Source: Selaginella moellendorffii
Taxonomy: Eukaryota; Plantae; Lycopodiophyta
Reading direction: 5' to 3'
NCBI RefSeq assembly: GCF_000143415.4
Contig: NW_003314347.1
Location: 333,438-397,437 of the forward strand
DNA: 64,000 nt
Positions 3,746 through 14,179 of this stretch are shown here, piece after piece. Under the pieces are notes generated by a model, which saw only the letters and a program-made list of their open reading frames with translations, was not told the DNA's origin and made no database searches. Within the stretch, counting starts at the first letter, position 1. Each line of letters starts with the position of its first letter. The translations under genes and the position numbers were made by a program.

Positions 3746-3829
3746 AGTGCACCACTTTCGGAGCCACGCACACAAGAACCAAGAGTTGAATCAATCGGTA
3801 ATCAGACAGATTTTTATTTGTTACATAGA

Positions 3830-3995
3830 AGTCTGCTGGGAGCTCCTTCTTTCGATCATCCTCTCTTTCACCTTGTGAGTGGTAAACGGGTCCACAGGAT
3901 CGTCCTGGGTAACATTGGGAGTCCCATAAGCCATGATCATTCCCTTCTGCATTGCCTCCTCGATCGCGGCTGGAGTCCACTTCTCCCCTTCTTAT
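3830..3995 (-). pseudogene. Unidentified coding fragment, paralogous to 7051-7298
   Basis: EKWTPAAIEEAMQKGMIMAYGTPNVTQDDPVDPFTTHKVKERM aligns with EKWTPAAIWEALAKDLIEGCGVGNVTKDTLRDPITLDKVRDRM. The two share the nucleotide core gatcgcggctggagtccacttctcc. Confidence 0.6.
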
Positions 3996-4147
3996 ACAGG
4001 AATTCAAGGGCTCAGATGGGTCAAAGAACCGACGGTGGCGATTATTTCGTTCTGACTTGAAATTTAGGCTAGATTTTAGGGCTGGATGTTGACCGTTGGG
4101 CGTGTTAGGTTAAAATTCATATTTCTTGCACGCCACAGCTTCTCTCC

Positions 4148-6572
4148 ATGCCGGGCGTGTCTCGATTCTCCGAGAATGGGCTCGCGCTGCCGGCCAGGCC
4201 GTCGTCATCGCAGAAGAAGAAGAGACGGGCAAGGCATCAGCAGCAGCAGCAGCAGGCGAGCTATGTCCGCAAGAGTGTCACAATGTCACGGAAGAAGAAG
4301 CGGCAGGGCAGTGTGGAGGACGCGATGCGAGCTTATCGAGCACAGCTTCGTCCCCTCCTTGATGCTATCAGGTTTGTGGAGTCGAGCAATAGGGTGGATT
4401 GTCCCGATGGAGACGGTGGTGCCAGCATTGGGCCTCTCCAGATCTCCGAGCACTACCATGTCGATGCCTGGAAGAACAAGCGAGCATCCTGGCTACGCTG
4501 CCGGTATGTTTCTTCTTCTCTTTCTTCGTTCTCTATGCTTCTTCGTTGGTTTCTTACACTAGTTAGTCCAGAGATTTAGAGCACGCGGAGAACACAGTGG
4601 TGGCATATTGGATGAGGTACTGCTCGGAAGCTCTAACACAACATGACTGGGAAATTCTAGCTAAGATTCACAATGGTACGAAGTGGTGTGATGGATGGAA
4701 TCTAGCAGCTTTGCTGATGGTTCGTTTTTCCTCTTTGAGACTGTAGGTGGTCCTCAAGGTCCTCAGAGAGAGAAGACAACGTATTACTGGAGCAAGGTGT
4801 GCAGGTACCTGGAAGAGAATCACAGGCACGTCTCTCCCTTTCCGTCGCCTGCGAGACCCGAATGTAAGATCTATCCATCAACTTCCAAGTTTACGAATCT
4901 GGACAAACGAATAGAATGCAAGCTGAAGCACGGTGAGGCTCCCCTTCATCTCTCTTTGCCAAGGATTTTCTAAATGTTTCTCCATCTACAGGTTTGAAAG
5001 TCCTAGCTGCAGAAAGACGATTGCCGATTGTTAACAAGCACCCCAGGCTTCAAGTACGAAGGCTCCCTTTCACGGACATTTCTTCCACAGCATTAAACGT
5101 TTGCTCTTCCCGCCACGAGCCGGGGAGGCTCATAGACGATCTGAGCATTCAACGTTTGGGACTGGAATATAGCTTCTTGAGTTCCGAGTCTGCAGTCGAA
5201 CTAGACTCGGAGAACCAACCTTTGAAGCAAAGTTCCAGCGACGATGAGAAAGGTTTCGCTACGCCATCCGTCAAGAAGAAGGAAGGAGGAGTCGACAGGC
5301 TGCAAGATCTTCACGAAGAAGCTGTAGAATGTCGTAGTTCCAGCGCTCGCAACCTCGACATTCTCTATTCTTCTGAGTTATCAGAACAAAAGGAGGAGGA
5401 GATTCTTACGGAGTTGGCTCGGCTACTGCCACTGGACCTGTCGGAGTGTGTCGACAGAAGAAACGATGAAAGCTTTGAGTTCCCTCCAGTTCCAGAGCAG
5501 GCTGACTACGCGACGCCGGTTATGAATCCAGACAGCCGAGCTATGCAAGTCGCTGCTGAGAACGTTCCTGGGACTGGTGCTGAGACTGCGATTTCCACTC
5601 CAAAGCGCAAAACCTCTGCCTCGCTTGATTTTGATGCAACTTTTACGCTGCTTGAGCAGCTGGAAAGACCGGAGTCCTCTCTTTCCTCGGGTGCGGAGAA
5701 GAAATTGATGTCCGAGCTGGCGGACTTGCTTGACTTGCCACAGGCGGCCACTCCACCGCGGCAGACGGAGCAAGAAGAAGACGAACTCGCCAAGCACACT
5801 GCGAAGCTAAGTCTTGCGGACTTTCTACTTGAGATACCAGACCCGTCGGCTTCGATAGAGTACGTCAAGGCCTTGTTCTCCTGCGAGAACATCCTGCTGG
5901 AGAAGCTTTGTCACAAAGTTGGAGGTCTGGAAGAGTCACTAGATTCCTCGGAACCAATGCCAGTGCCACCTCCAGCTGCAAGCATAAGAACGGAGGAGTC
6001 CCGGACAGGCAACTCTAGTTTTGGCGCCGGATGCACTTGCCACTCTAGCGACAATCGCTTGACATCGTCCTTGAAGAGGCTCTGTGCAGTGTGGGAGGAG
6101 CAAGACGTCGATCTACTGACCCGTTCCTTGAGGTTTAAGATGCTCACTGCGAGCAGCTCTTCATCTGAGGTATGTGAATCCCGTATACACCAGGCACTAC
6201 AGAAATGATGCTTCTTTTCTTCCAGCTTTCTACAAAAGAGGCACCGTGCATCGCCTGGGAGATCCACGCGTTGCAGAACATCGACAAGAGTGCTAAGTCT
6301 CGAAGGGCTGCAAAGGAGCTTATACAGCAGCAAAGAGATAAGATTTACATCAACATAGGCGCCTATGCGAGCAGGAGTGAGAGGCATCAGCTCTATTCGG
6401 CATGGGGGGTTCGCAGGCTATCAACAGGCCGGCTCAAAAAGATCGTCTACGACCTTATGTGGAGGGATACAAAGAGGTAAAAAGCTCATCAACTTAAGAG
6501 TGAGCACTAACACTAACCGAGAACATTGGCAGGTATTCTCATAGCGCTGAGCTCGTGAGCCTCTACCTCTGA
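4148..6572 (+). CDS. Lysozyme-like (i-type/destabilase- or SLT-like) domain + long acidic linker + DUF3490 (NACK kinesin C-terminal)-like domain, ~704 aa
   Basis: Exons 4148-4503, 4572-4675, 4747-4932, 4992-6169, 6226-6476 and 6533-6572. All introns are GT-AG and 56-71 bp, and the exons total 2115 nt in frame. Lysozyme-like motifs: LDAIRFVES..GDGGASIGPLQI..AYWMRYC..LAKIHNGGPQG..TTYYWSKV. C-terminus: W.EQDVDLLTR..ERHQLYSAWGV..LMWRDT..SAELV. Confidence 0.75.
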
Positions 6573-7050
6573 GGATCTCGAGAGAAGGTATATCAGCCTA
6601 CTGGGCCGCAGGTAGAAAGAATTTCGCCATTAGTTGTTGCATTTGCAGAAAGTGGAACTTCAATATTGGTTTACCATTGAGCAAACGTTTAGTGGTCTGG
6701 AAGAAATGTCTGTGAGAGGCACCTGAGGCCTGGAGTGCTTGTTAACAATCGGCATTTGTCTAGGACTGTAGATGGAGGAACTTTTAGAAAATCCTCACCA
6801 TGGTTCTCACAGCCAGTCTTGGTGCTCCAACCATGGCACAAAAGGAGCACGACGAACAGCAAGCTTGGGCCCTGGAAACTTGGAGCTACACAAACTTCAA
6901 AGCGAATGAACGAAGAATTTCTCCTTGGTTGGTGATTACCAACCTGGAAATCTAAAGGAGAAATCTTGTTGGCTCCGGATGGTAAAACACAACAAGAGAT
7001 CTTCTAGGAGACAACAAGAGATTTTCTAGCACACAAGGGTTGGAGATTTT

Positions 7051-7298
7051 CTACTGATAATAACCGTCCAAGTAGACTTCTGGGAGCACTCCTCTCTCGC
7101 TCATTCTATCCCTCACCTTGTCGAGAGTAATCGGGTCCCGAAGAGTGTCCTTGGTAACGTTGCCAACCCCACAACCCTCAATCAAATCCTTTGCCAGTGC
7201 CTCCCAGATCGCGGCTGGAGTCCACTTCTCCACTTCAGCCTCAAAGTAGCCATCTTCGATCACGTACATCACTTGATGGTATAGAGTTGTGATCTGGT
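7051..7298 (-). pseudogene. Unidentified coding fragment (3' end of a gene), paralogous to 3830-3995
   Basis: Open frame YQITTLYHQVMYVIEDGYFEAEVEKWTPAAIW...GYYQ*. No upstream gene is recognisable. Confidence 0.5.
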
Positions 7299-7550
7299 AC
7301 TAGCAGCTTTGCTGATGGTTCGTTTTTCTTCTTCGCGACTATAGCTGGCTCCGCTTGTATTCCATCGTTTGTCCAGATTTGCGATAGATCATACATTTCG
7401 GTCTCACAGGCAATGAAAATGAGAGATAGATTTTCTTCCAGGTATGGTGGTCTGAAGAGGGATGGTAATCACCAACGGAGTAGAAATATCTTTTCATTCG
7501 CGGCCTTAAAGTTTGGTAGGCAACGAACTCGAAGAATTCCAGGATCAGAA

Positions 7551-8966
7551 ATGAGAAACTACAGCCCCAGCTTGCTGTTCGTCGTGTTCCTCTTCTCCGC
7601 GGCGGTGCTCTTATGGATTTTCGACAATTTTTCCGGCTCCGCAGAGTTGTCCCGGAGCCGAACTCTGGGATCAATTTTTCGCATCACCAACAACTACAAC
7701 GTCAGCGACACTTGCAGAAGCAGGATCGAGTACGCTTCCTACAGCCGCCAACGATCGACAAGCTTCAAGCCATCCGAGTCACTCCACCGCAAAATCCTCG
7801 AGTACGAGGCCTTACACGCGAGGTGCTATCCGGGCCCTGAGCAGTGCTCGAACTGTACATGCAACTATCTCCTCTACGTCACCGCCGGCCAGGGGATGGG
7901 CAACAAGATGATAGCTCTGGTGGCAACTTTTCTCTACGGGCTGCTCACGGACAGGACAATGGTGATCGCCGGATTGGAGAACTTGGCCACGCTCTTCTGC
8001 GAGCCGTTTCCATTCAGCTCCTGGCTGGTGCCGCCGAGCTGGAAGCACCTCGAGGGGGCGCCGTTTGACGGCTCGAAGTGGATCGGAAGCTTGGTGGGAT
8101 CTCTCAACTGCAGCCACGGTGTAAATTTCCCCGAGGTGGTGGTGGCCTATCTCGTGAGCAACTACAGGGACGAGGACAAGGCCTTCTTCTGCAAAGAACA
8201 CCAGCAAGCGCTCCAGTCCAGCTCGAAGTGGATCGTTCTCTCGTCCGACCAGTACTTTGCTCCGGCGCTCTACAACGTCCCGGTTTTCAGGAGCAAGCTC
8301 GAGGAATGGTTTCCACAGGAGGAGGCCATCTTTCATCTCCTGGTGAGGTACCTCTTGCATCCCAGGGACGTGGTGTGGGACAGGACGGCCAGATACTATG
8401 ATGCGTACCTGGCCCAAGCCGAGCTTCTAGTCGGGGTCCAGCTGCGAACTAGCAGCTGGTTCGCGCCATCCGACCTCGCCAACGATGCCTTCGACTGCCT
8501 GGTGCAACAAGGCGCGCTCGCGAACATCACCCAAGCGCGAGCTCCCAGATCGTCGCCGAGGAAGAGCAAGAAGGTGGCGGTGCTTGTGCTGTCGCTGGAT
8601 GCGCAGTACTCGCAGACGCTCAAGAACAAGGTGCTGGGCTACGATCTGGAAGATGGTTCGTCGGTTTCGATCCACCAGCCAAGCGTGGAAGGGGTGCAAA
8701 ACACCGGGAACCTGGATCACGATGCAAAGGCAGTGATGGAGATCTATCTGTTGTCAATGAGCGACGTGTTGGTGACGAGCCCGCCATCAACTTTTGGATA
8801 CTCGGCGGTGGGGCTGGCGGGCGTGCGGCCCGTCCAGTTTGCGTGCTCGGGGGCCGGCTGCTCGGTGAGGGAGTCGATGGAGCCGTGCTACCACACGTAC
8901 CCGGATCAGCAATTCATGCTGGACAACATCCAGCGATGCGAGTGCGAATTGGGATACAGGCTATAG
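7551..8966 (+). CDS. Xyloglucan fucosyltransferase-like protein (GT37, FUT1 family)
   Basis: Intronless ORF. An N-terminal TM segment (LLFVVFLFSAAVLLWIF) follows ATG 7551. GT37 motifs: GMGNKMIALVATFLYGLLTDR, LFCEPFP.SSW, FHLLVRYLLHP, GVQLR, EIYLLS.SDVLVTS..STFGY, SMEPCYH. An upstream in-frame ATG exists at 7413. Confidence 0.92.
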   Translation: MRNYSPSLLFVVFLFSAAVLLWIFDNFSGSAELSRSRTLGSIFRITNNYNVSDTCRSRIEYASYSRQRSTSFKPSESLHRKILEYEALHARCYPGPEQCSNCTCNYLLYVTAGQGMGNKMIALVATFLYGLLTDRTMVIAGLENLATLFCEPFPFSSWLVPPSWKHLEGAPFDGSKWIGSLVGSLNCSHGVNFPEVVVAYLVSNYRDEDKAFFCKEHQQALQSSSKWIVLSSDQYFAPALYNVPVFRSKLEEWFPQEEAIFHLLVRYLLHPRDVVWDRTARYYDAYLAQAELLVGVQLRTSSWFAPSDLANDAFDCLVQQGALANITQARAPRSSPRKSKKVAVLVLSLDAQYSQTLKNKVLGYDLEDGSSVSIHQPSVEGVQNTGNLDHDAKAVMEIYLLSMSDVLVTSPPSTFGYSAVGLAGVRPVQFACSGAGCSVRESMEPCYHTYPDQQFMLDNIQRCECELGYRL

Positions 8967-10899: not shown

Positions 10900-12417
10900 C
10901 TACAATAGCTGACGCTCGCCTTTAACGTACACCACGATGCTGTCATAAGTTTCCATCGTGTATGGACACTCGGCATAGCATCTGCGAAACATAAAATAAC
11001 TTCCAGCTTGTAAGAACTCGCGAAACCAGACAAACTTACCTCAACTCGTGCCAAAACGTGGATGCGTTGCTACCGAGAAACCTCTCGAGCTGCGAAACGG
11101 CCTCGGACGAGCTCTGGCTCGAGCTCTTCCTCGGACCTTCGGGAGGATCATCCGACCCTTCTATCGCGTCGATTCTGTAAGAAAACCAGTGGCTGAGAAC
11201 CAGTTGCTCTAACACGGAGTGATCTGTGTCCCCCAGGATGGCTTTCAGCTCTCGTGTGATCCAGGGTCTCAAACGACGCTCGGCTCTCGTCTTTGCGTCG
11301 AGATCATACGGCCTTAACTGCGAATAGAAACACCAACGAGTCAACAAACTGTCCTGAGAGAAAGTTTCAAAGCCAGTCACACACGAAACTTACTTCCATA
11401 CGCTTCTTCACATTCAACGGAACGGCTCGAAGACCCTTCCTGTATATGCTGCAAGCAACACGCGGAAAGTGTCAACCAAGAACAAAAAAAAAGAAGAAAA
11501 ACACACACCCACACAAACAGACCTTGTACGCCACGAAAGAGCTCTTTCTGTAAGAACTTCAGCAGTGAGCCTCTCCCTCTCAGCGGGGGATATGAAACAT
11601 CTTTGCCGGGGCAAAGGGATTGATCTCCGGTACGATCTGCTGACCCTCGACTGCATGAGTTGTTGCAACCGCAATCTGGATCGAAATGTCATAGTGCTCC
11701 TGACAACTTCTCTGGAAACAAGAGAAAGAAGTCTAGTGTAGCTAAAGTCACGCCAAACTCTGGAAAAAAAAAGTTTTCTTACCTCTCCAGCCTTGCTTGG
11801 TTCCTACTCGTGCTCGTCCGCCTCTCGGGAAGCACGCTGGAGGGCCTCCCATCCGTGGACAGCCGATAGTCCGATGTAGAAATTCGAAAGTCGCTCAAGG
11901 ACAACCTGTAATCCTCGGCTGTGGAGAGCCTGTAGTCCAAAGAAGGCCTGTAGTCGAGCGGCGGCAAAATCCTCTCGACCCGCTTCTGCCCCTTGATGGT
12001 GTGGTACCAACCTGTGAACTCGGCCTTGCAAAGCGGGCACGACCTGCGAACTTTGCTCCACTCCTCGATGCAGCCGACGCAGAAGCTGTGCATGCACCAC
12101 CACAGCGACGCGTTCTTCGACTCCTCAATCGCCCCGAGACAGATCGGACAGACGTGCTCTGCCTCGGCCCCCTTTTCCTCGTCCTCGCGATGCATTGGCA
12201 ACCGAGAAGGTTGCCTCAGCTCGAACGTTATCTCGTGCTGCTGATGCTGCTGTGAACAAGCCCGTGCAAGCCCAGGCATGATGGCTCCACCGTGCTGTGA
12301 GCTGATAGACGTCTCGGCGGGGCGAAAGCTCCAAACTTGAAGTGAAGGGAGCCACACAAAGTTCCCGCTACTGCTGGTGGTGGCGGTGTTGGAGTTGGAT
12401 CTCTCGACGGGGTTCAT
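10900..12417 (-). CDS. RING-HC E3 ubiquitin ligase, Topors-like
   Basis: RING motif CPICLG..CMHSFCVGCIEEWSKVRRSCPLCK. Later exons give LRPWITREL.AIL, FLGSNASTFWHELR and CYAECPYTMETYD before the stop at 10900. Internal exon limits are approximate. Confidence 0.85.
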
Positions 12418-14179
12418 CAACTCGGGGAGGTCTTGCGAGGCTGTGTTTTCAGTTGCTGTCGGAAGGAATCCTGCTTATCCTGCCAGAAGCGTCTGCACAT
12501 CCCAACAAGGCACCTATCAATCGCAACGCAAATGCACTTACGAGTTGCAACATGACAAACGTAGAGGAACATAATGCCGAACAAACAGTAAAGGCCAGAC
12601 AAGAACTACAGCCAAGCCAAACTCAAAAGCCAAAAAGGAAGGGAACCCAGGGACGATTTGGCTGCTCGACCGAAAAACAGGAGCGGATGCATCACAGCAA
12701 CTGGGTAACCACTCTTCGATCGAACTTCTGAGCCGCATCCAGCCATCGAAAGAGATAGACGGATTGGAATATGATGCAAGAAGGGGGGGACAGACCAAGC
12801 CCAGCAAAAGTGGTGTGGTGCTTTCAGTTCAAATAGCATTCAATGCTTCCATAAAAGCTGTGCTAGTATAGCAATTCGCGTTTTTTTCTTTCTTTCCTGG
12901 CTTCCATAACCACTCAAGCTGGAAGCAAGGACCGACTTTGAGACAAACCAGTCCCATCTTCCACTCACAGGAGAAAAGAAAAGCAACAGATCAAAGCAAG
13001 AAAACCAAGAGATCAAACCAAACACACGAGTTTTTCGCTCTAGATCCAAAGCAAAGAGGCCAGACGGGATGGATGGACTGACCACACTCGGCCAAATTCG
13101 CAGTTCAAACATGGAAAGCATAAGGATGAGGCACGCATTTAATGACTTACCAAATTCTTCGCTCCGAGCTAGCTCTTTCAAACCAATGAACCACCTGTTG
13201 CCAGTTCCTGCGAAGATTCCAATTCCCTCCTCGCTTTGGATCAAGAAAGAAAACCCCATTAGATCAAAATCCAAGAGAACGCGAGAGAATTTCTTAGAGG
13301 CTAAGCTAACCTGTGCTTGCTGCTTAATCCATCGCGGCGCCGGACTGGAATGCTCGACAATGTGAATCGCGGCGGCAGCACGGCGGATCGCGGCTTAAAT
13401 ACCCCCCCTTCTTGCTCCAAGACAAGAATTAGGGTTCTGGGCTACACGCCGCCATAGCCGTGGACCTCTGGAAAAAAGGGGGGAAAAGGGCGAGCCCACA
13501 AAATCCACGCTGGAGGAACCGGCGCCAACATGGCAGGATGTCAGCGGTCAGATGGATGGGACGGTTTTGGGTCGCAGGCCACGCGGCGCCAGCTAATCGT
13601 GACAGGTGTTCTCCCTGGCATCTTCACCGTATCTTCTTGTCGTTAATATCTCCCATGATCACAGTGATATTTGCCGATCAAACAAAAACCATGGCCTCGA
13701 TAGATCCTTTGAGCGAAGTGCTTTTGTCAAAACTTCGTTGGCTGGGCGATTAAATTCTATTAATCTCGGTCGTCCAATCCATTTCGGACCACGAGGAATA
13801 ATTCCGACACGTGTAGCGAGTATTTTAATCGAGAGCACCGCAACACCGAAAGTTCGAAAAAATTTATACTACTATCAGCGAGCTTTGGAAGAATGAGAAA
13901 TATTTTTTCACATTCTTCTATACTATGATGTGATAAGCATGTGAAGTGAAGAGTGTATCACACTTCTCTTTCGGAGATTGCCTTTACAGTGTGTACTGAC
14001 CGACCAGTCACTGCAAAGCCCATGTCACCTAAATCAAACACAGTGAGATTTAAAGGTTAGTTAACTTTCATCTTGCGTTAAGATTCACTCAGCTTGTTCT
14101 TCACAGGAAAAAAAAAGGCAAAGCAAAACGAAAGCTCCGGCCATTGCCAAGGCCGTGCAAAACCTTTCTGGAGATTACT

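What the first reader, a model, noticed from the sequence alone, without database searches (positions are those of the whole stretch)
4148..6572. Intron-hidden plant gene fusing a lysozyme-type (peptidoglycan hydrolase-like) domain to a NACK-kinesin-tail (DUF3490)-like domain
Seen in sequence: six exons splice in frame through canonical 56-71 bp introns into a ~704-aa protein that the ORF track breaks into four pieces. Exons 1-3 give AIRFVES-x9-GDGGASIGPLQI...AYWMRYC...LAKIHNGGPQG...TTYYWSKV. Established knowledge: 'E-S...G..QI' is the catalytic-Glu signature of the lysozyme/lytic-transglycosylase fold, and 'RIHNGGP.G...T..YW.KV' is the hallmark C-terminus of invertebrate i-type lysozymes (destabilase) and their bacterial relatives. 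This family is not normally associated with land plants. The last exons resemble the DUF3490 tail of NACK1/HINKEL cytokinesis kinesins, but there is no motor domain. Inference: this is a novel architecture, possibly with a horizontally acquired enzyme domain. Mosses and lycophytes retain plastid peptidoglycan genes, so it could remodel the plastid wall during division, or it could be antibacterial.
Basis: partly seen in the sequence, partly recalled or inferred. Interest (0 to 1): 0.9.

Follow-up and report, generated by a model that had tools for sequence, protein, structure and literature searches.

The report
Spikemoss lysozyme fused to kinesin-tail domain
This is a real, expressed Selaginella gene joining a cysteine-poor "invertebrate-type" lysozyme domain to a motor-less kinesin-tail (DUF3490) domain; it belongs to an old, unstudied gene family shared by conjugating green algae, mosses, lycophytes and ferns, so it is a conserved puzzle, not a one-off or a recent gene transfer.

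Summary
Six exons (4148-6572, +) splice through GT..AG introns of 68, 71, 59, 56 and 56 bp into a 704-aa protein. It is identical to RefSeq "uncharacterized protein LOC9657483" of Selaginella moellendorffii. Spliced RNA contigs from four studies show all five junctions, including exon 3 to exon 4.

- **Lysozyme domain (aa 58-185):** it matches solved i-type lysozymes (E 9e-9). The model (pLDDT 91.5) is closest to leech destabilase. The catalytic Glu78 and Asp89 are invariant in 42 relatives.
- **Tail domain (aa 576-704):** it is DUF3490-like. Selaginella scores 21.8 bits, below the cut-off of 25; the moss and Diphasiastrum orthologues pass.
- **Not unique:** Spirogloea, Adiantum and Physcomitrium show the whole architecture. 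Closterium, Sphagnum, Diphasiastrum and Ceratopteris show parts of it. Several orthologues carry IQ motifs that Selaginella lacks.
- **Not a recent transfer:** the lysozyme domain sits in one green-lineage clade with chlorophyte sequences.
- **Location:** no signal peptide or membrane segment, so it is probably intracellular.
- **Function:** untested, and I found no paper on it.

Plastid-wall remodelling is neither supported nor excluded. The scan noted the same architecture on another piece of this genome (s1-402649), possibly the broken second copy I found.

The parts
4148..6572 (+). Whole coding region of LOC9657483. Six exons: 4148-4503, 4572-4675, 4747-4932, 4992-6169, 6226-6476, 6533-6572. 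704 aa plus stop.
   Evidence: Spliced translation is identical to P0001. Introns are seen as joints or loose ends in RNA contigs.
4148..4318 (+). N-terminal leader, aa 1-57. It is basic (26% K/R, 4% D/E) with two Lys/Arg clusters, at 4214-4237 and 4286-4306. No hydrophobic signal sequence.
   Evidence: Composition and hydropathy scan. The leaders of the orthologues are poorly conserved.
4319..4841 (+). Cysteine-poor i-type (destabilase-type) lysozyme domain, aa 58-185, interrupted by introns 1 and 2.
   Evidence: PDB i-type lysozymes at E 9e-9 to 8e-7. AF2 pLDDT 91.5. Foldseek top hits 8bbu, 4pj2, 2dqa, 3ab6.
4379..4381 (+). Codon of Glu78, the presumed catalytic acid.
   Evidence: Invariant in the 42-sequence alignment A3. 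Aligns with the catalytic Glu of i-type lysozymes.
4412..4414 (+). Codon of Asp89, the presumed second catalytic carboxylate.
   Evidence: Invariant in A3. Lies one residue from the column of destabilase Asp46 in the pairwise alignment.
4669..4760 (+). HNGGPQG signature (aa 152-158), split by intron 2. His152 corresponds to destabilase His112.
   Evidence: His is invariant and GGP nearly invariant in A3. Alignment to 8bbu. PMC10126035.
4933..4991 (+). Intron 3, which joins the lysozyme exons to the long exon 4.
   Evidence: Loose ends in four runs spell the spliced junction.
4842..6070 (+). Linker, aa 186-575. It is acidic and Ser-rich and poorly conserved. It lacks the IQ motifs that several orthologues carry.
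   Evidence: Alignment A1. No Pfam IQ hit in P0001, but hits in Spirogloea, Adiantum, Ceratopteris and Physcomitrium. Motif scan.
5357..5446 (+). Short motif shared with most orthologues (LY..(D)IS...E.E.LTELA.LLPL), aa 338-367.
   Evidence: Consensus of A1/A2. Coordinates.
5675..5737 (+). Second, similar motif (LS...E...SELA.L), aa 444-464.
   Evidence: Consensus of A1/A2. Coordinates.
6071..6569 (+). C-terminal all-helical DUF3490-like domain, aa 576-704, interrupted by introns 4 and 5.
   Evidence: PF11995 at 21.8 bits here. 8 of 9 orthologue tails hit it, and Physcomitrium (28.1) and Diphasiastrum (25.1) pass the cut-off of 25. AF2 pLDDT 86.6, seven helices.
6679..6795 (-). Inverted partial copy (72% identity) of the end of intron 3 plus the start of exon 4 (4962-5106), about 100 nt past the stop codon.
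   Evidence: the repeat finder I1-I3, blastn, tblastn. Also present beside the second copy in L001.

Best explanation
**What it is.** This is the intact, transcribed Selaginella orthologue of an ancient streptophyte gene family. The family's full architecture is an N-terminal cysteine-poor i-type-like lysozyme domain, then a long disordered linker (with IQ calmodulin-binding motifs in several lineages, absent in Selaginella), then a C-terminal helical DUF3490 domain of the kind found at the end of NACK/HINKEL kinesin-7 motors.

**Shown here.**
- The gene structure and its splicing.
- Homology and fold of the lysozyme domain.
- Retention of the Glu78/Asp89 pair and of the Ser93/His152 positions.
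- DUF3490 homology of the tail.
- Orthologues from Zygnematophyceae to ferns.
- Absence of a signal peptide or transmembrane segment.

**Inferred.**
- The protein is a soluble intracellular enzyme.
- Its N-terminal domain still cleaves a beta-1,4 amino-sugar glycan (muramidase or chitinase-type chemistry).
- Its DUF3490 tail acts as a protein-binding or localising module, as a kinesin tail would, placing the enzyme at a cytoskeleton-linked site.
- In most lineages calcium/calmodulin modulates this through the IQ motifs.

The substrate and the site of action are unknown.
For: - **Gene and splicing:**
- **Lysozyme homology:** phmmer against PDB gives 8bbu at 9e-9, 3ab6 and 4pj2 at 1.4e-7, and 2dqa at 8e-7. 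The library search finds 1468 relatives at E <= 0.001.
- **Fold:** AF2 pLDDT 91.5, pTM 0.86. The best Foldseek matches are i-type lysozymes (TM 0.61-0.65 by query, 0.69-0.75 by target), followed by lytic transglycosylases and g-type lysozymes.
- **Catalytic residues:** E, D, H and W are invariant in 42 sequences. The per-orthologue table shows Selaginella, Sphagnum and the zygnematophytes keep every signature residue.
- **Tail:** DUF3490 hits in 8 of 9 orthologue tails, two of them above the gathering score.
- **Orthologues and IQ motifs:**
- **Vertical descent:** the long form is a 98* clade inside a 96* green-lineage clade.
- **No hydrophobic segment:** maximum 19-residue Kyte-Doolittle mean is 0.74.
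Against: - No activity, localisation or partner has been measured for any member.
- Pfam Destabilase does not hit the Selaginella protein at E <= 1, and its DUF3490 score is below the cut-off.
- The catalytic Asp aligns one residue off the destabilase Asp.
- Physcomitrium and Cryptomeria have replaced several signature residues, so catalysis may not be what the family is kept for.
- The basic leader could be an organelle or nuclear targeting signal that I could not score.
- The DUF3490 fold matched nothing in PDB or the ESM Atlas, so a binding or localising role for the tail rests only on its position in kinesins.
Confidence: 0.6

Rival explanations
1. It is a plastid peptidoglycan hydrolase. 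The protein reaches the plastid envelope and cuts the peptidoglycan layer during plastid division.
For: - The catalytic pair is kept.
- The closest paralogues carry LysM peptidoglycan/chitin-binding domains.
- Every lineage where I found the family is reported to depend on, or encode, plastid peptidoglycan synthesis: Closterium (PMC3398972), moss and Selaginella (PMC4015805), a conifer, Picea (PMC12681378), and prasinophytes (PMC4815162).
- No angiosperm appeared among the 34 best hits I could name.
Against: - No recognisable transit peptide could be tested. The leader is Lys/Arg-clustered and not conserved.
- IQ motifs and a kinesin-type tail point to the cytosol, whereas the peptidoglycan lies under the outer envelope.
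- A phyletic-profile screen for genes that track the peptidoglycan pathway listed LysM families but no lysozyme (PMC4815162).
- DipM is already a known splitting enzyme (PMC4015805).
- Absence from angiosperms was not systematically tested.
Confidence: 0.15
2. It is a pseudo-enzyme scaffold. The lysozyme fold is kept as a binding module, and the protein works through its linker motifs, IQ sites and DUF3490 tail.
For: - Physcomitrium has changed S93, G95, Q98, I99, G155 and P156, and sits on a long branch (0.99). Cryptomeria has lost Asp89.
- Ferns have changed the NGGP signature.
- Even so, Physcomitrium, Adiantum and Ceratopteris keep the lysozyme domain, and Physcomitrium and Adiantum also keep the DUF3490 tail. 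The Cryptomeria model is short and shows no tail.
Against: - Glu78 is kept in every orthologue whose model covers it, and Asp89 in all but Cryptomeria.
- Selaginella, Sphagnum, Spirogloea and Closterium keep the full signature across a very long time span, as expected for a working active site.
Confidence: 0.15
3. It is an intracellular isopeptidase. Like leech destabilase, the domain cleaves gamma-glutamyl isopeptide bonds, here on cytosolic or cytoskeletal proteins to which the tail brings it.
For: - The positions of the proposed destabilase triad Ser51-His112-Glu34 (PMC10126035) are occupied by Ser93, His152 and Glu78.
- The protein lacks any secretion signal, yet peptidoglycan is not a cytosolic substrate.
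Against: - The destabilase triad is itself only a proposal.
- Ser93 is not conserved in the wider family, where many members have Ala.
- There is no evidence of such substrates in plants.
Confidence: 0.06
4. It is an annotation artefact: two neighbouring genes (a small lysozyme and a DUF3490 protein) wrongly joined. Or the enzyme domain was recently acquired by horizontal transfer.
For: - The exon 3/exon 4 junction is shown only by short overhangs of 17 and 10 nt.
- An inverted copy of that junction region lies downstream, which shows past rearrangement.
- Atlas neighbours include phage clusters.
Against: - The overhangs spell a 30-mer found only in the spliced form, in four runs from four studies.
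- No contig reads into intron 3.
- Spirogloea, Adiantum and Physcomitrium carry both domains in one protein.
- The streptophyte and chlorophyte domains form one 96* clade, with the long form nested as a 98* clade.
Confidence: 0.03

Closest known systems
Invertebrate (i-type) lysozymes / destabilase (GH22i, Pfam PF05497): leech destabilase 8bbu, Tapes japonica lysozyme 2dqa, Meretrix lusoria lysozyme 3ab6
   Same: - Significant sequence similarity, about 29-31% identity over about 100-120 residues.
- The same predicted fold.
- The catalytic Glu, a nearby Asp, the GP.QI strand, the HNGGP.G signature and the YW.KV helix.
   Different: - No signal peptide, and almost none of the many disulfide cysteines of the animal enzymes.
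- The Asp sits one residue later in the loop.
- It is embedded at the N-terminus of a 704-aa intracellular multi-domain protein.
- The Pfam model does not reach its cut-off on this protein.
C-terminal DUF3490 domain (PF11995) of plant kinesin-7 NACK1 / HINKEL / TETRASPORE
   Same: - The tail (aa 576-704) matches profile positions about 9-139 of 161 in the orthologues.
- It sits at the extreme C-terminus, as it does in HINKEL/NACK1 (PMC6385969).
   Different: - No kinesin motor and no stalk; the domain follows a lysozyme and a disordered linker.
- The Selaginella score of 21.8 bits is under the cut-off of 25.
- What DUF3490 does is unknown even in kinesins.
Green-lineage LysM-lysozyme proteins (Selaginella LOC9662026, Riccia, Mesostigma, Chlorokybus, Chloropicon, Picocystis, Myrmecia), all auto-named 'lysozyme'
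   Same: - The same cysteine-poor lysozyme domain, in one 96* clade with it.
- No signal peptide stands ahead of the first LysM domain in the streptophyte members read (P0016, P0020, P0013, P0015).
   Different: - They are 250-390 aa proteins with one or two N-terminal LysM domains, no IQ and no DUF3490.
- They are paralogues, not orthologues.
Orthologues: Physcomitrium patens LOC112282919 (1360-1378 aa), Sphagnum CY35_01G049700, Diphasiastrum O6H91_03G077100, Adiantum, Ceratopteris KP509_02G074000, Spirogloea SM000153S01619, Closterium CLOM_g22415
   Same: - The same domain order, and in most of them the same two short linker motifs.
- The same C-terminal ...TGRLKKIVY.LLW.DP.R..ESA.LV..YL ending in Physcomitrium, Diphasiastrum, Adiantum and Ceratopteris. 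The Sphagnum, Closterium and Spirogloea models end differently.
   Different: - Spirogloea, Adiantum, Ceratopteris and Physcomitrium have Pfam IQ hits (one to four stretches), and Sphagnum and Diphasiastrum show IQ-like sequence in the alignment. Selaginella has none and is the shortest complete member.
- Physcomitrium has a degenerate lysozyme signature.
- The Closterium and Sphagnum models do not show the tail, so their architecture is only partly confirmed.

Membership tests
i-type lysozyme / Destabilase (PF05497, GH22i) | Significant sequence similarity to characterised i-type lysozymes | tested here: met
   phmmer against PDB: 8bbu 9e-9, 3ab6 and 4pj2 1.4e-7, 2dqa 7.8e-7
i-type lysozyme / Destabilase (PF05497, GH22i) | Pfam PF05497 score at or above the gathering cut-off (26.2 bits) | tested here: not met
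   No hit at E <= 1 for P0001. The orthologues Pteridium (33.5) and Adiantum (27.1) pass; the others score 16-23 bits.
i-type lysozyme / Destabilase (PF05497, GH22i) | Lysozyme fold closest to i-type structures | tested here: met
   AF2 pLDDT 91.5. The six best Foldseek hits are all i-type lysozymes.
i-type lysozyme / Destabilase (PF05497, GH22i) | Catalytic Glu plus Asp dyad (destabilase Glu34/Asp46) | tested here: met
   Glu78 and Asp89 are invariant in 42 sequences. Glu aligns exactly and Asp is one residue off in the flexible loop.
i-type lysozyme / Destabilase (PF05497, GH22i) | Secreted, disulfide-rich small protein | tested here: not met
   No hydrophobic N-terminus and only 4 Cys in the domain. 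The Cys columns of the animal enzymes are mostly non-Cys here.
i-type lysozyme / Destabilase (PF05497, GH22i) | Muramidase (and/or isopeptidase) activity | not testable with these tools
   Needs an enzyme assay.
DUF3490 (PF11995, NACK-type kinesin-7 tail) | Pfam score at or above the gathering cut-off (25 bits) | tested here: inconclusive
   Selaginella tail 21.8 bits (E 1.7e-4). The orthologous tails of Physcomitrium (28.1) and Diphasiastrum (25.1) pass. 8 of 9 tails hit at E <= 0.1.
DUF3490 (PF11995, NACK-type kinesin-7 tail) | Located at the C-terminus of a kinesin motor protein | tested here: not met
   No kinesin domain in P0001 or in any orthologue scanned.
IQ-motif (PF00612) calmodulin-binding proteins | At least one IQ motif | tested here: not met
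   None in P0001 by Pfam or by motif scan. Present in Spirogloea (four stretches), Adiantum, Ceratopteris and Physcomitrium.
Streptophyte lysozyme-(IQ)-DUF3490 family (unnamed) | Same domain order and orthology of the lysozyme domain | tested here: met
   Full-length alignment. The 13 long-form rows form a 98* clade.

The most novel reading that the evidence does not exclude
The family is a cytoskeleton- or division-site-tethered hydrolase that streptophytes built by joining an ancestral green-lineage lysozyme to a kinesin-7-type tail and calmodulin-binding sites, and that flowering plants later lost.

It could act in one of two ways:
- It splits plastid peptidoglycan from a position set by the division machinery.
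- It acts as a destabilase-like isopeptidase on cytosolic targets.

Either would be a kind of enzyme targeting not described in plants.
Probability: 0.15. Interest if true: 0.85.

Novelty: new variant of a known kind. Interest (0 to 1): 0.55.

Why it matters
Both domains are known kinds. Their union in a signal-less protein conserved from conjugating green algae to ferns has, as far as my searches reach, never been discussed in a paper.

It matters in three ways:
- It gives the uncharacterised DUF3490 kinesin tail a second, motor-free context, which could reveal what that domain binds.
- It is a candidate for the poorly known hydrolytic side of plastid peptidoglycan biology in non-flowering plants.
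- It shows that "invertebrate-type" lysozymes have an old, cysteine-poor, apparently intracellular branch in the green lineage.

If it proves to be only a scaffold with a dead enzyme fold, it is still a clear example of enzyme-domain co-option.

Tried and rejected
- **Pfam and NCBIfam on single exons** gave almost nothing, because the domains are split by introns. The full-length RefSeq protein had to be found first.
- **PDB sequence search with the tail** found no hit.
- **Fold searches with the tail model** found nothing meaningful: Foldseek PDB best E 1.3, ESM Atlas TM below 0.4. The Atlas feature search on the tail found no usable hit.
- **A profile search with the full-length alignment** returned only ferns, because the candidate list was saturated. 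It could not be used to test for absence in seed plants.
- **A second lysozyme copy downstream,** suggested by the repeat at 7300-7348, was looked for by tblastn. Only short non-coding remnants exist.
- **The odd RNA joint 5088->5400** (311 nt, non-canonical ends) was considered as alternative splicing and rejected. It equals a genomic deletion in the second, broken copy.
- **Recent horizontal transfer** was rejected on the tree.
- **A flagella-linked role** was considered because mosses, lycophytes and ferns have swimming sperm. I set it aside because Spirogloea and Closterium, which lack flagella (my own knowledge), keep intact copies.
Full report
**Observation**

The window is Selaginella moellendorffii nuclear DNA. 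The exons are 4148-4503, 4572-4675, 4747-4932, 4992-6169, 6226-6476 and 6533-6572 on the + strand. The five GT..AG introns are 68, 71, 59, 56 and 56 bp. The CDS is 2115 nt in frame and ends in a stop.

A database search with the large exon-4 ORF returned a 704-aa protein, P0001, [quoted passage not shown]. It is identical to my splice product. So the gene is real and is already modelled in RefSeq. It is not hidden from annotation, only from an ORF track.

**Transcription and the fusion**

Twenty public runs from eleven studies hold the stretch. I laid the contigs of four runs from four studies on 3900-6900.
- Introns 1, 2, 4 and 5 appear as clean GT..AG joints.
- Intron 3 is the one that joins the lysozyme exons to the rest. 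For it, all four runs have contigs that end 17 letters into exon 4 or begin 10 letters before the end of exon 3.
- The combined 30-mer exists only in the spliced form and nowhere in the window.
- No listed contig reads into intron 3.

This is good evidence for one mRNA, short of a single long read. The runs are only guessed to be RNA, but contigs without introns can hardly come from anything else.

**The N-terminal domain**

- *Sequence:* residues 50-220 match the solved i-type lysozymes. These are leech destabilase 8bbu (9e-9), Meretrix lusoria 3ab6/4pj2 (1.4e-7) and Tapes japonica 2dqa (7.8e-7). A full HMMER pass over 1.84 billion representatives gave 1468 relatives at E <= 0.001.
- *Fold:* with 42 of these as an alignment, AlphaFold2 gave pLDDT 91.5 and pTM 0.86. 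The six best Foldseek matches in the PDB are all i-type lysozymes. Lytic transglycosylases, GH134 mannanases and g-type lysozymes follow.
- *Catalytic residues:* four columns are invariant in the 42 sequences: Glu78, Asp89, His152 and Trp168. In destabilase the muramidase dyad is Glu34/Asp46, and a Ser51-His112-Glu34 triad has been proposed for its isopeptidase activity (PMC10126035). Here Glu78 aligns with the Glu, His152 with His112 and Ser93 with Ser51. Asp89 lies one residue after the Asp46 column, in a flexible loop.
- *What does not fit:* the Pfam Destabilase model does not reach the Selaginella protein at all, although it passes its cut-off on two fern orthologues. The domain has almost none of the cysteines of the secreted animal enzymes.

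**The C-terminal domain**

- Residues 570-704 hit Pfam DUF3490 at 21.8 bits, below the cut-off of 25.
- Eight of nine orthologous tails hit the same model at the same place. The tails of Physcomitrium (28.1 bits, profile 9-137 of 161) and Diphasiastrum (25.1 bits) pass the cut-off.
- The AlphaFold2 model is a seven-helix domain (pLDDT 86.6). It has no meaningful match in the PDB or the ESM Atlas, and no PDB sequence match.
- There is no kinesin motor anywhere in the protein.

**The family**

| Lineage | Member | What was shown |
|---|---|---|
| Zygnematophyceae | Spirogloea muscicola, 1356 aa | Four IQ stretches; weak Destabilase and DUF3490 hits |
| Zygnematophyceae | Closterium, 670 and 511 aa | Lysozyme domain; the models show no tail |
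| Moss | Sphagnum magellanicum, 1122 aa | Lysozyme domain and IQ-like sequence; the model shows no tail |
| Moss | Physcomitrium patens LOC112282919, 1360-1378 aa | IQ and DUF3490 |
| Lycophyte | Diphasiastrum complanatum, 1006 aa | Partial lysozyme domain, IQ-like sequence, DUF3490 tail |
| Ferns | Adiantum (two species), Ceratopteris, a Pteridium fragment | Adiantum nelumboides: Destabilase, IQ and DUF3490; Ceratopteris: Destabilase and IQ |
| Conifer | Cryptomeria japonica, 589 aa | Short and divergent model |

 Where UniRef names these proteins, it calls them "lysozyme".

A full-length alignment shows the shared plan:
1. A variable leader.
2. The lysozyme domain.
3. An IQ region.
4. Two short acidic helical motifs.
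5. The DUF3490 tail.

Selaginella lacks the IQ region, while Diphasiastrum keeps IQ-like sequence. Selaginella is therefore a shortened, derived member.

**Origin of the enzyme domain**

I made a tree of 150 lysozyme domains (quick IQ-TREE, 127 columns, so many forks are unresolved).
- The 13 long-form rows form one clade (SH-aLRT 98).
- That clade sits inside a clade of 30 rows (96).
- Within that clade, the ~200-aa Mesostigma proteins group with the long form at weaker support (82). The LysM-lysozyme proteins of Mesostigma, Chlorokybus, Riccia and Selaginella form a separate branch.
- The clade also holds ten unlabelled rows. My label pattern also caught two unnamed 200-aa rows outside the clade, which I ignore.

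Three of the ten unlabelled rows are chlorophyte proteins or cluster with one: Picocystis, Chloropicon and Myrmecia. Two more (P0017 and its identical copy P0163) lie on a metagenomic contig with NPC1 and HYPK genes, so that contig is eukaryotic.

The domain is therefore old in the green lineage. The fusion to the tail predates the split of Zygnematophyceae and land plants. Nothing supports a transfer into land plants. A much older bacterial or phage source remains possible, since the Atlas neighbours include phage clusters. The tree is unrooted and does not address that.

**Where it acts**

- The protein has no hydrophobic stretch. The highest 19-residue hydropathy mean is 0.74.
- The first 57 residues are 26% Lys/Arg and 4% Asp/Glu, with two Lys/Arg clusters. 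The leaders of the orthologues are not conserved.
- I could not run targeting predictors.
- With IQ motifs and a kinesin-type tail in the family, a cytosolic, cytoskeleton-linked or nuclear location is the most economical reading. This is inference.

**Is the enzyme alive?**

Selaginella, Sphagnum, Spirogloea, Closterium and an unnamed transcript keep every signature residue. Other members do not:
- Ferns changed the NGGP motif.
- Physcomitrium changed six signature positions and sits on a long branch.
- Cryptomeria lost the Asp.

So the active site looks maintained in most lineages and relaxed in some. A non-catalytic role therefore stays a real rival.

**Plastid peptidoglycan**

Every lineage where I found the family is reported to have plastid peptidoglycan genes or a dependence on them (PMC3398972, PMC4015805, PMC12681378, PMC4815162). 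No angiosperm was among the 34 best hits that I could name.

Three things weaken this:
- Absence from angiosperms was not tested systematically, and my profile search for this failed.
- A published phyletic screen for peptidoglycan-linked genes did not list a lysozyme.
- A cytosolic enzyme would not reach a layer that lies under the outer envelope.

I put this reading at about 0.15.

**Literature**

Searches combining destabilase or i-type lysozyme with Selaginella, plants, chloroplast, moss or algae found nothing relevant, and neither did searches for DUF3490 or PF05497. Subscription journals are not covered.

**Second copy**

A second locus lies on scaffold GL377585.1 (L001). It aligns at 86-89% identity and is broken:
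- In-frame stops and frameshifts in exon 1.
- Loss of the region around the catalytic Glu.
- A 311-bp deletion equal to window 5090-5400.
- Further frameshifts in exons 4 and 5.

The deletion explains the odd 5088->5400 joint seen in all four runs, so the broken copy is still transcribed. The old 441-aa model P0002 comes from this locus.

**Earlier scan notes**

- s1-410669 describes and follows up the LysM paralogue, and reaches the same view of an old green-lineage family.
- s1-402649 is a first-reader note of the same lysozyme plus kinesin-tail architecture on another piece of this genome. It is possibly the broken copy, but I did not check its coordinates.

**Verdict**

The domain calls are right. 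The claims of a unique architecture and a horizontal origin are not. What remains is a conserved, expressed, uncharacterised streptophyte protein that tethers a probably active, signal-less i-type-like lysozyme to a kinesin-tail domain. I call it a new variant of known kinds, of moderate to good interest, with its function open.

Noticed in passing
L001 (GL377585.1:669578-683529, reversed), gene at about 5690-8010: This is a second Selaginella copy of the gene, 86-89% identical in DNA. It is a pseudogene: stops and frameshifts in exon 1, the Glu78 region deleted, a 311-bp deletion equal to window 5090-5400, and frameshifts in exons 4-5. RNA contigs carry the deletion joint, so it is still transcribed. 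The old model SELMODRAFT_413249 (P0002) was built on it.
   Followed up: yes
window 6679-6795 (-) versus 4962-5106 (+): An inverted copy, 72% identical, of the last 30 nt of intron 3 plus the first 115 nt of exon 4. It lies about 100 nt past the stop codon and is also present beside the pseudogene copy (L001 about 7919-7993). It is older than the duplication. If it lies inside the 3' UTR it could pair with exon 4 in the transcript.
   Followed up: partly
window 3827-3991 versus 7071-7236, and 4702-4750 versus 7300-7348: Direct repeats on either side of the gene. One is 75% identical and covers small minus-strand ORFs with no Pfam hit. The other is 90% identical and covers the end of intron 2 plus 4 nt of exon 3. 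They look like remnants of a local tandem duplication whose second lysozyme copy has been almost entirely deleted.
   Followed up: partly
window 7413-8966 (+) and 11779-12420 (-): The neighbours are ordinary plant genes. One is an intron-less xyloglucan fucosyltransferase (PF03254, E 3e-82). The other is a RING-finger protein.
   Followed up: partly
P0016, P0020, P0013, P0015; P0008, P0010, P0011: There are two other streptophyte architectures of the same lysozyme domain. One has one or two LysM domains followed by the lysozyme (Selaginella LOC9662026, Riccia, Mesostigma, Chlorokybus). The other is a set of ~200-aa Mesostigma and Chlorokybus proteins with a moderately hydrophobic C-terminal stretch that might be a tail anchor. 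In none of them is a signal peptide evident.
   Followed up: partly
P0023 (Physcomitrium patens LOC112282919), lysozyme domain aa 74-198: The moss model organism's orthologue has replaced six signature residues (GPLQI to LPLKP, NGGP to NGDV) and sits on a long branch. It may be a poor proxy for the enzyme activity of the family.
   Followed up: partly
window 6770 -> 3912 (run X3, contig record 18): One 1442-nt RNA contig runs through exons 4-6 to 6770 and then continues in sequence that matches 3912-3990 with five differences. It carries many differences throughout, so it probably comes from the other copy or an allele with a different downstream arrangement.
   Followed up: no
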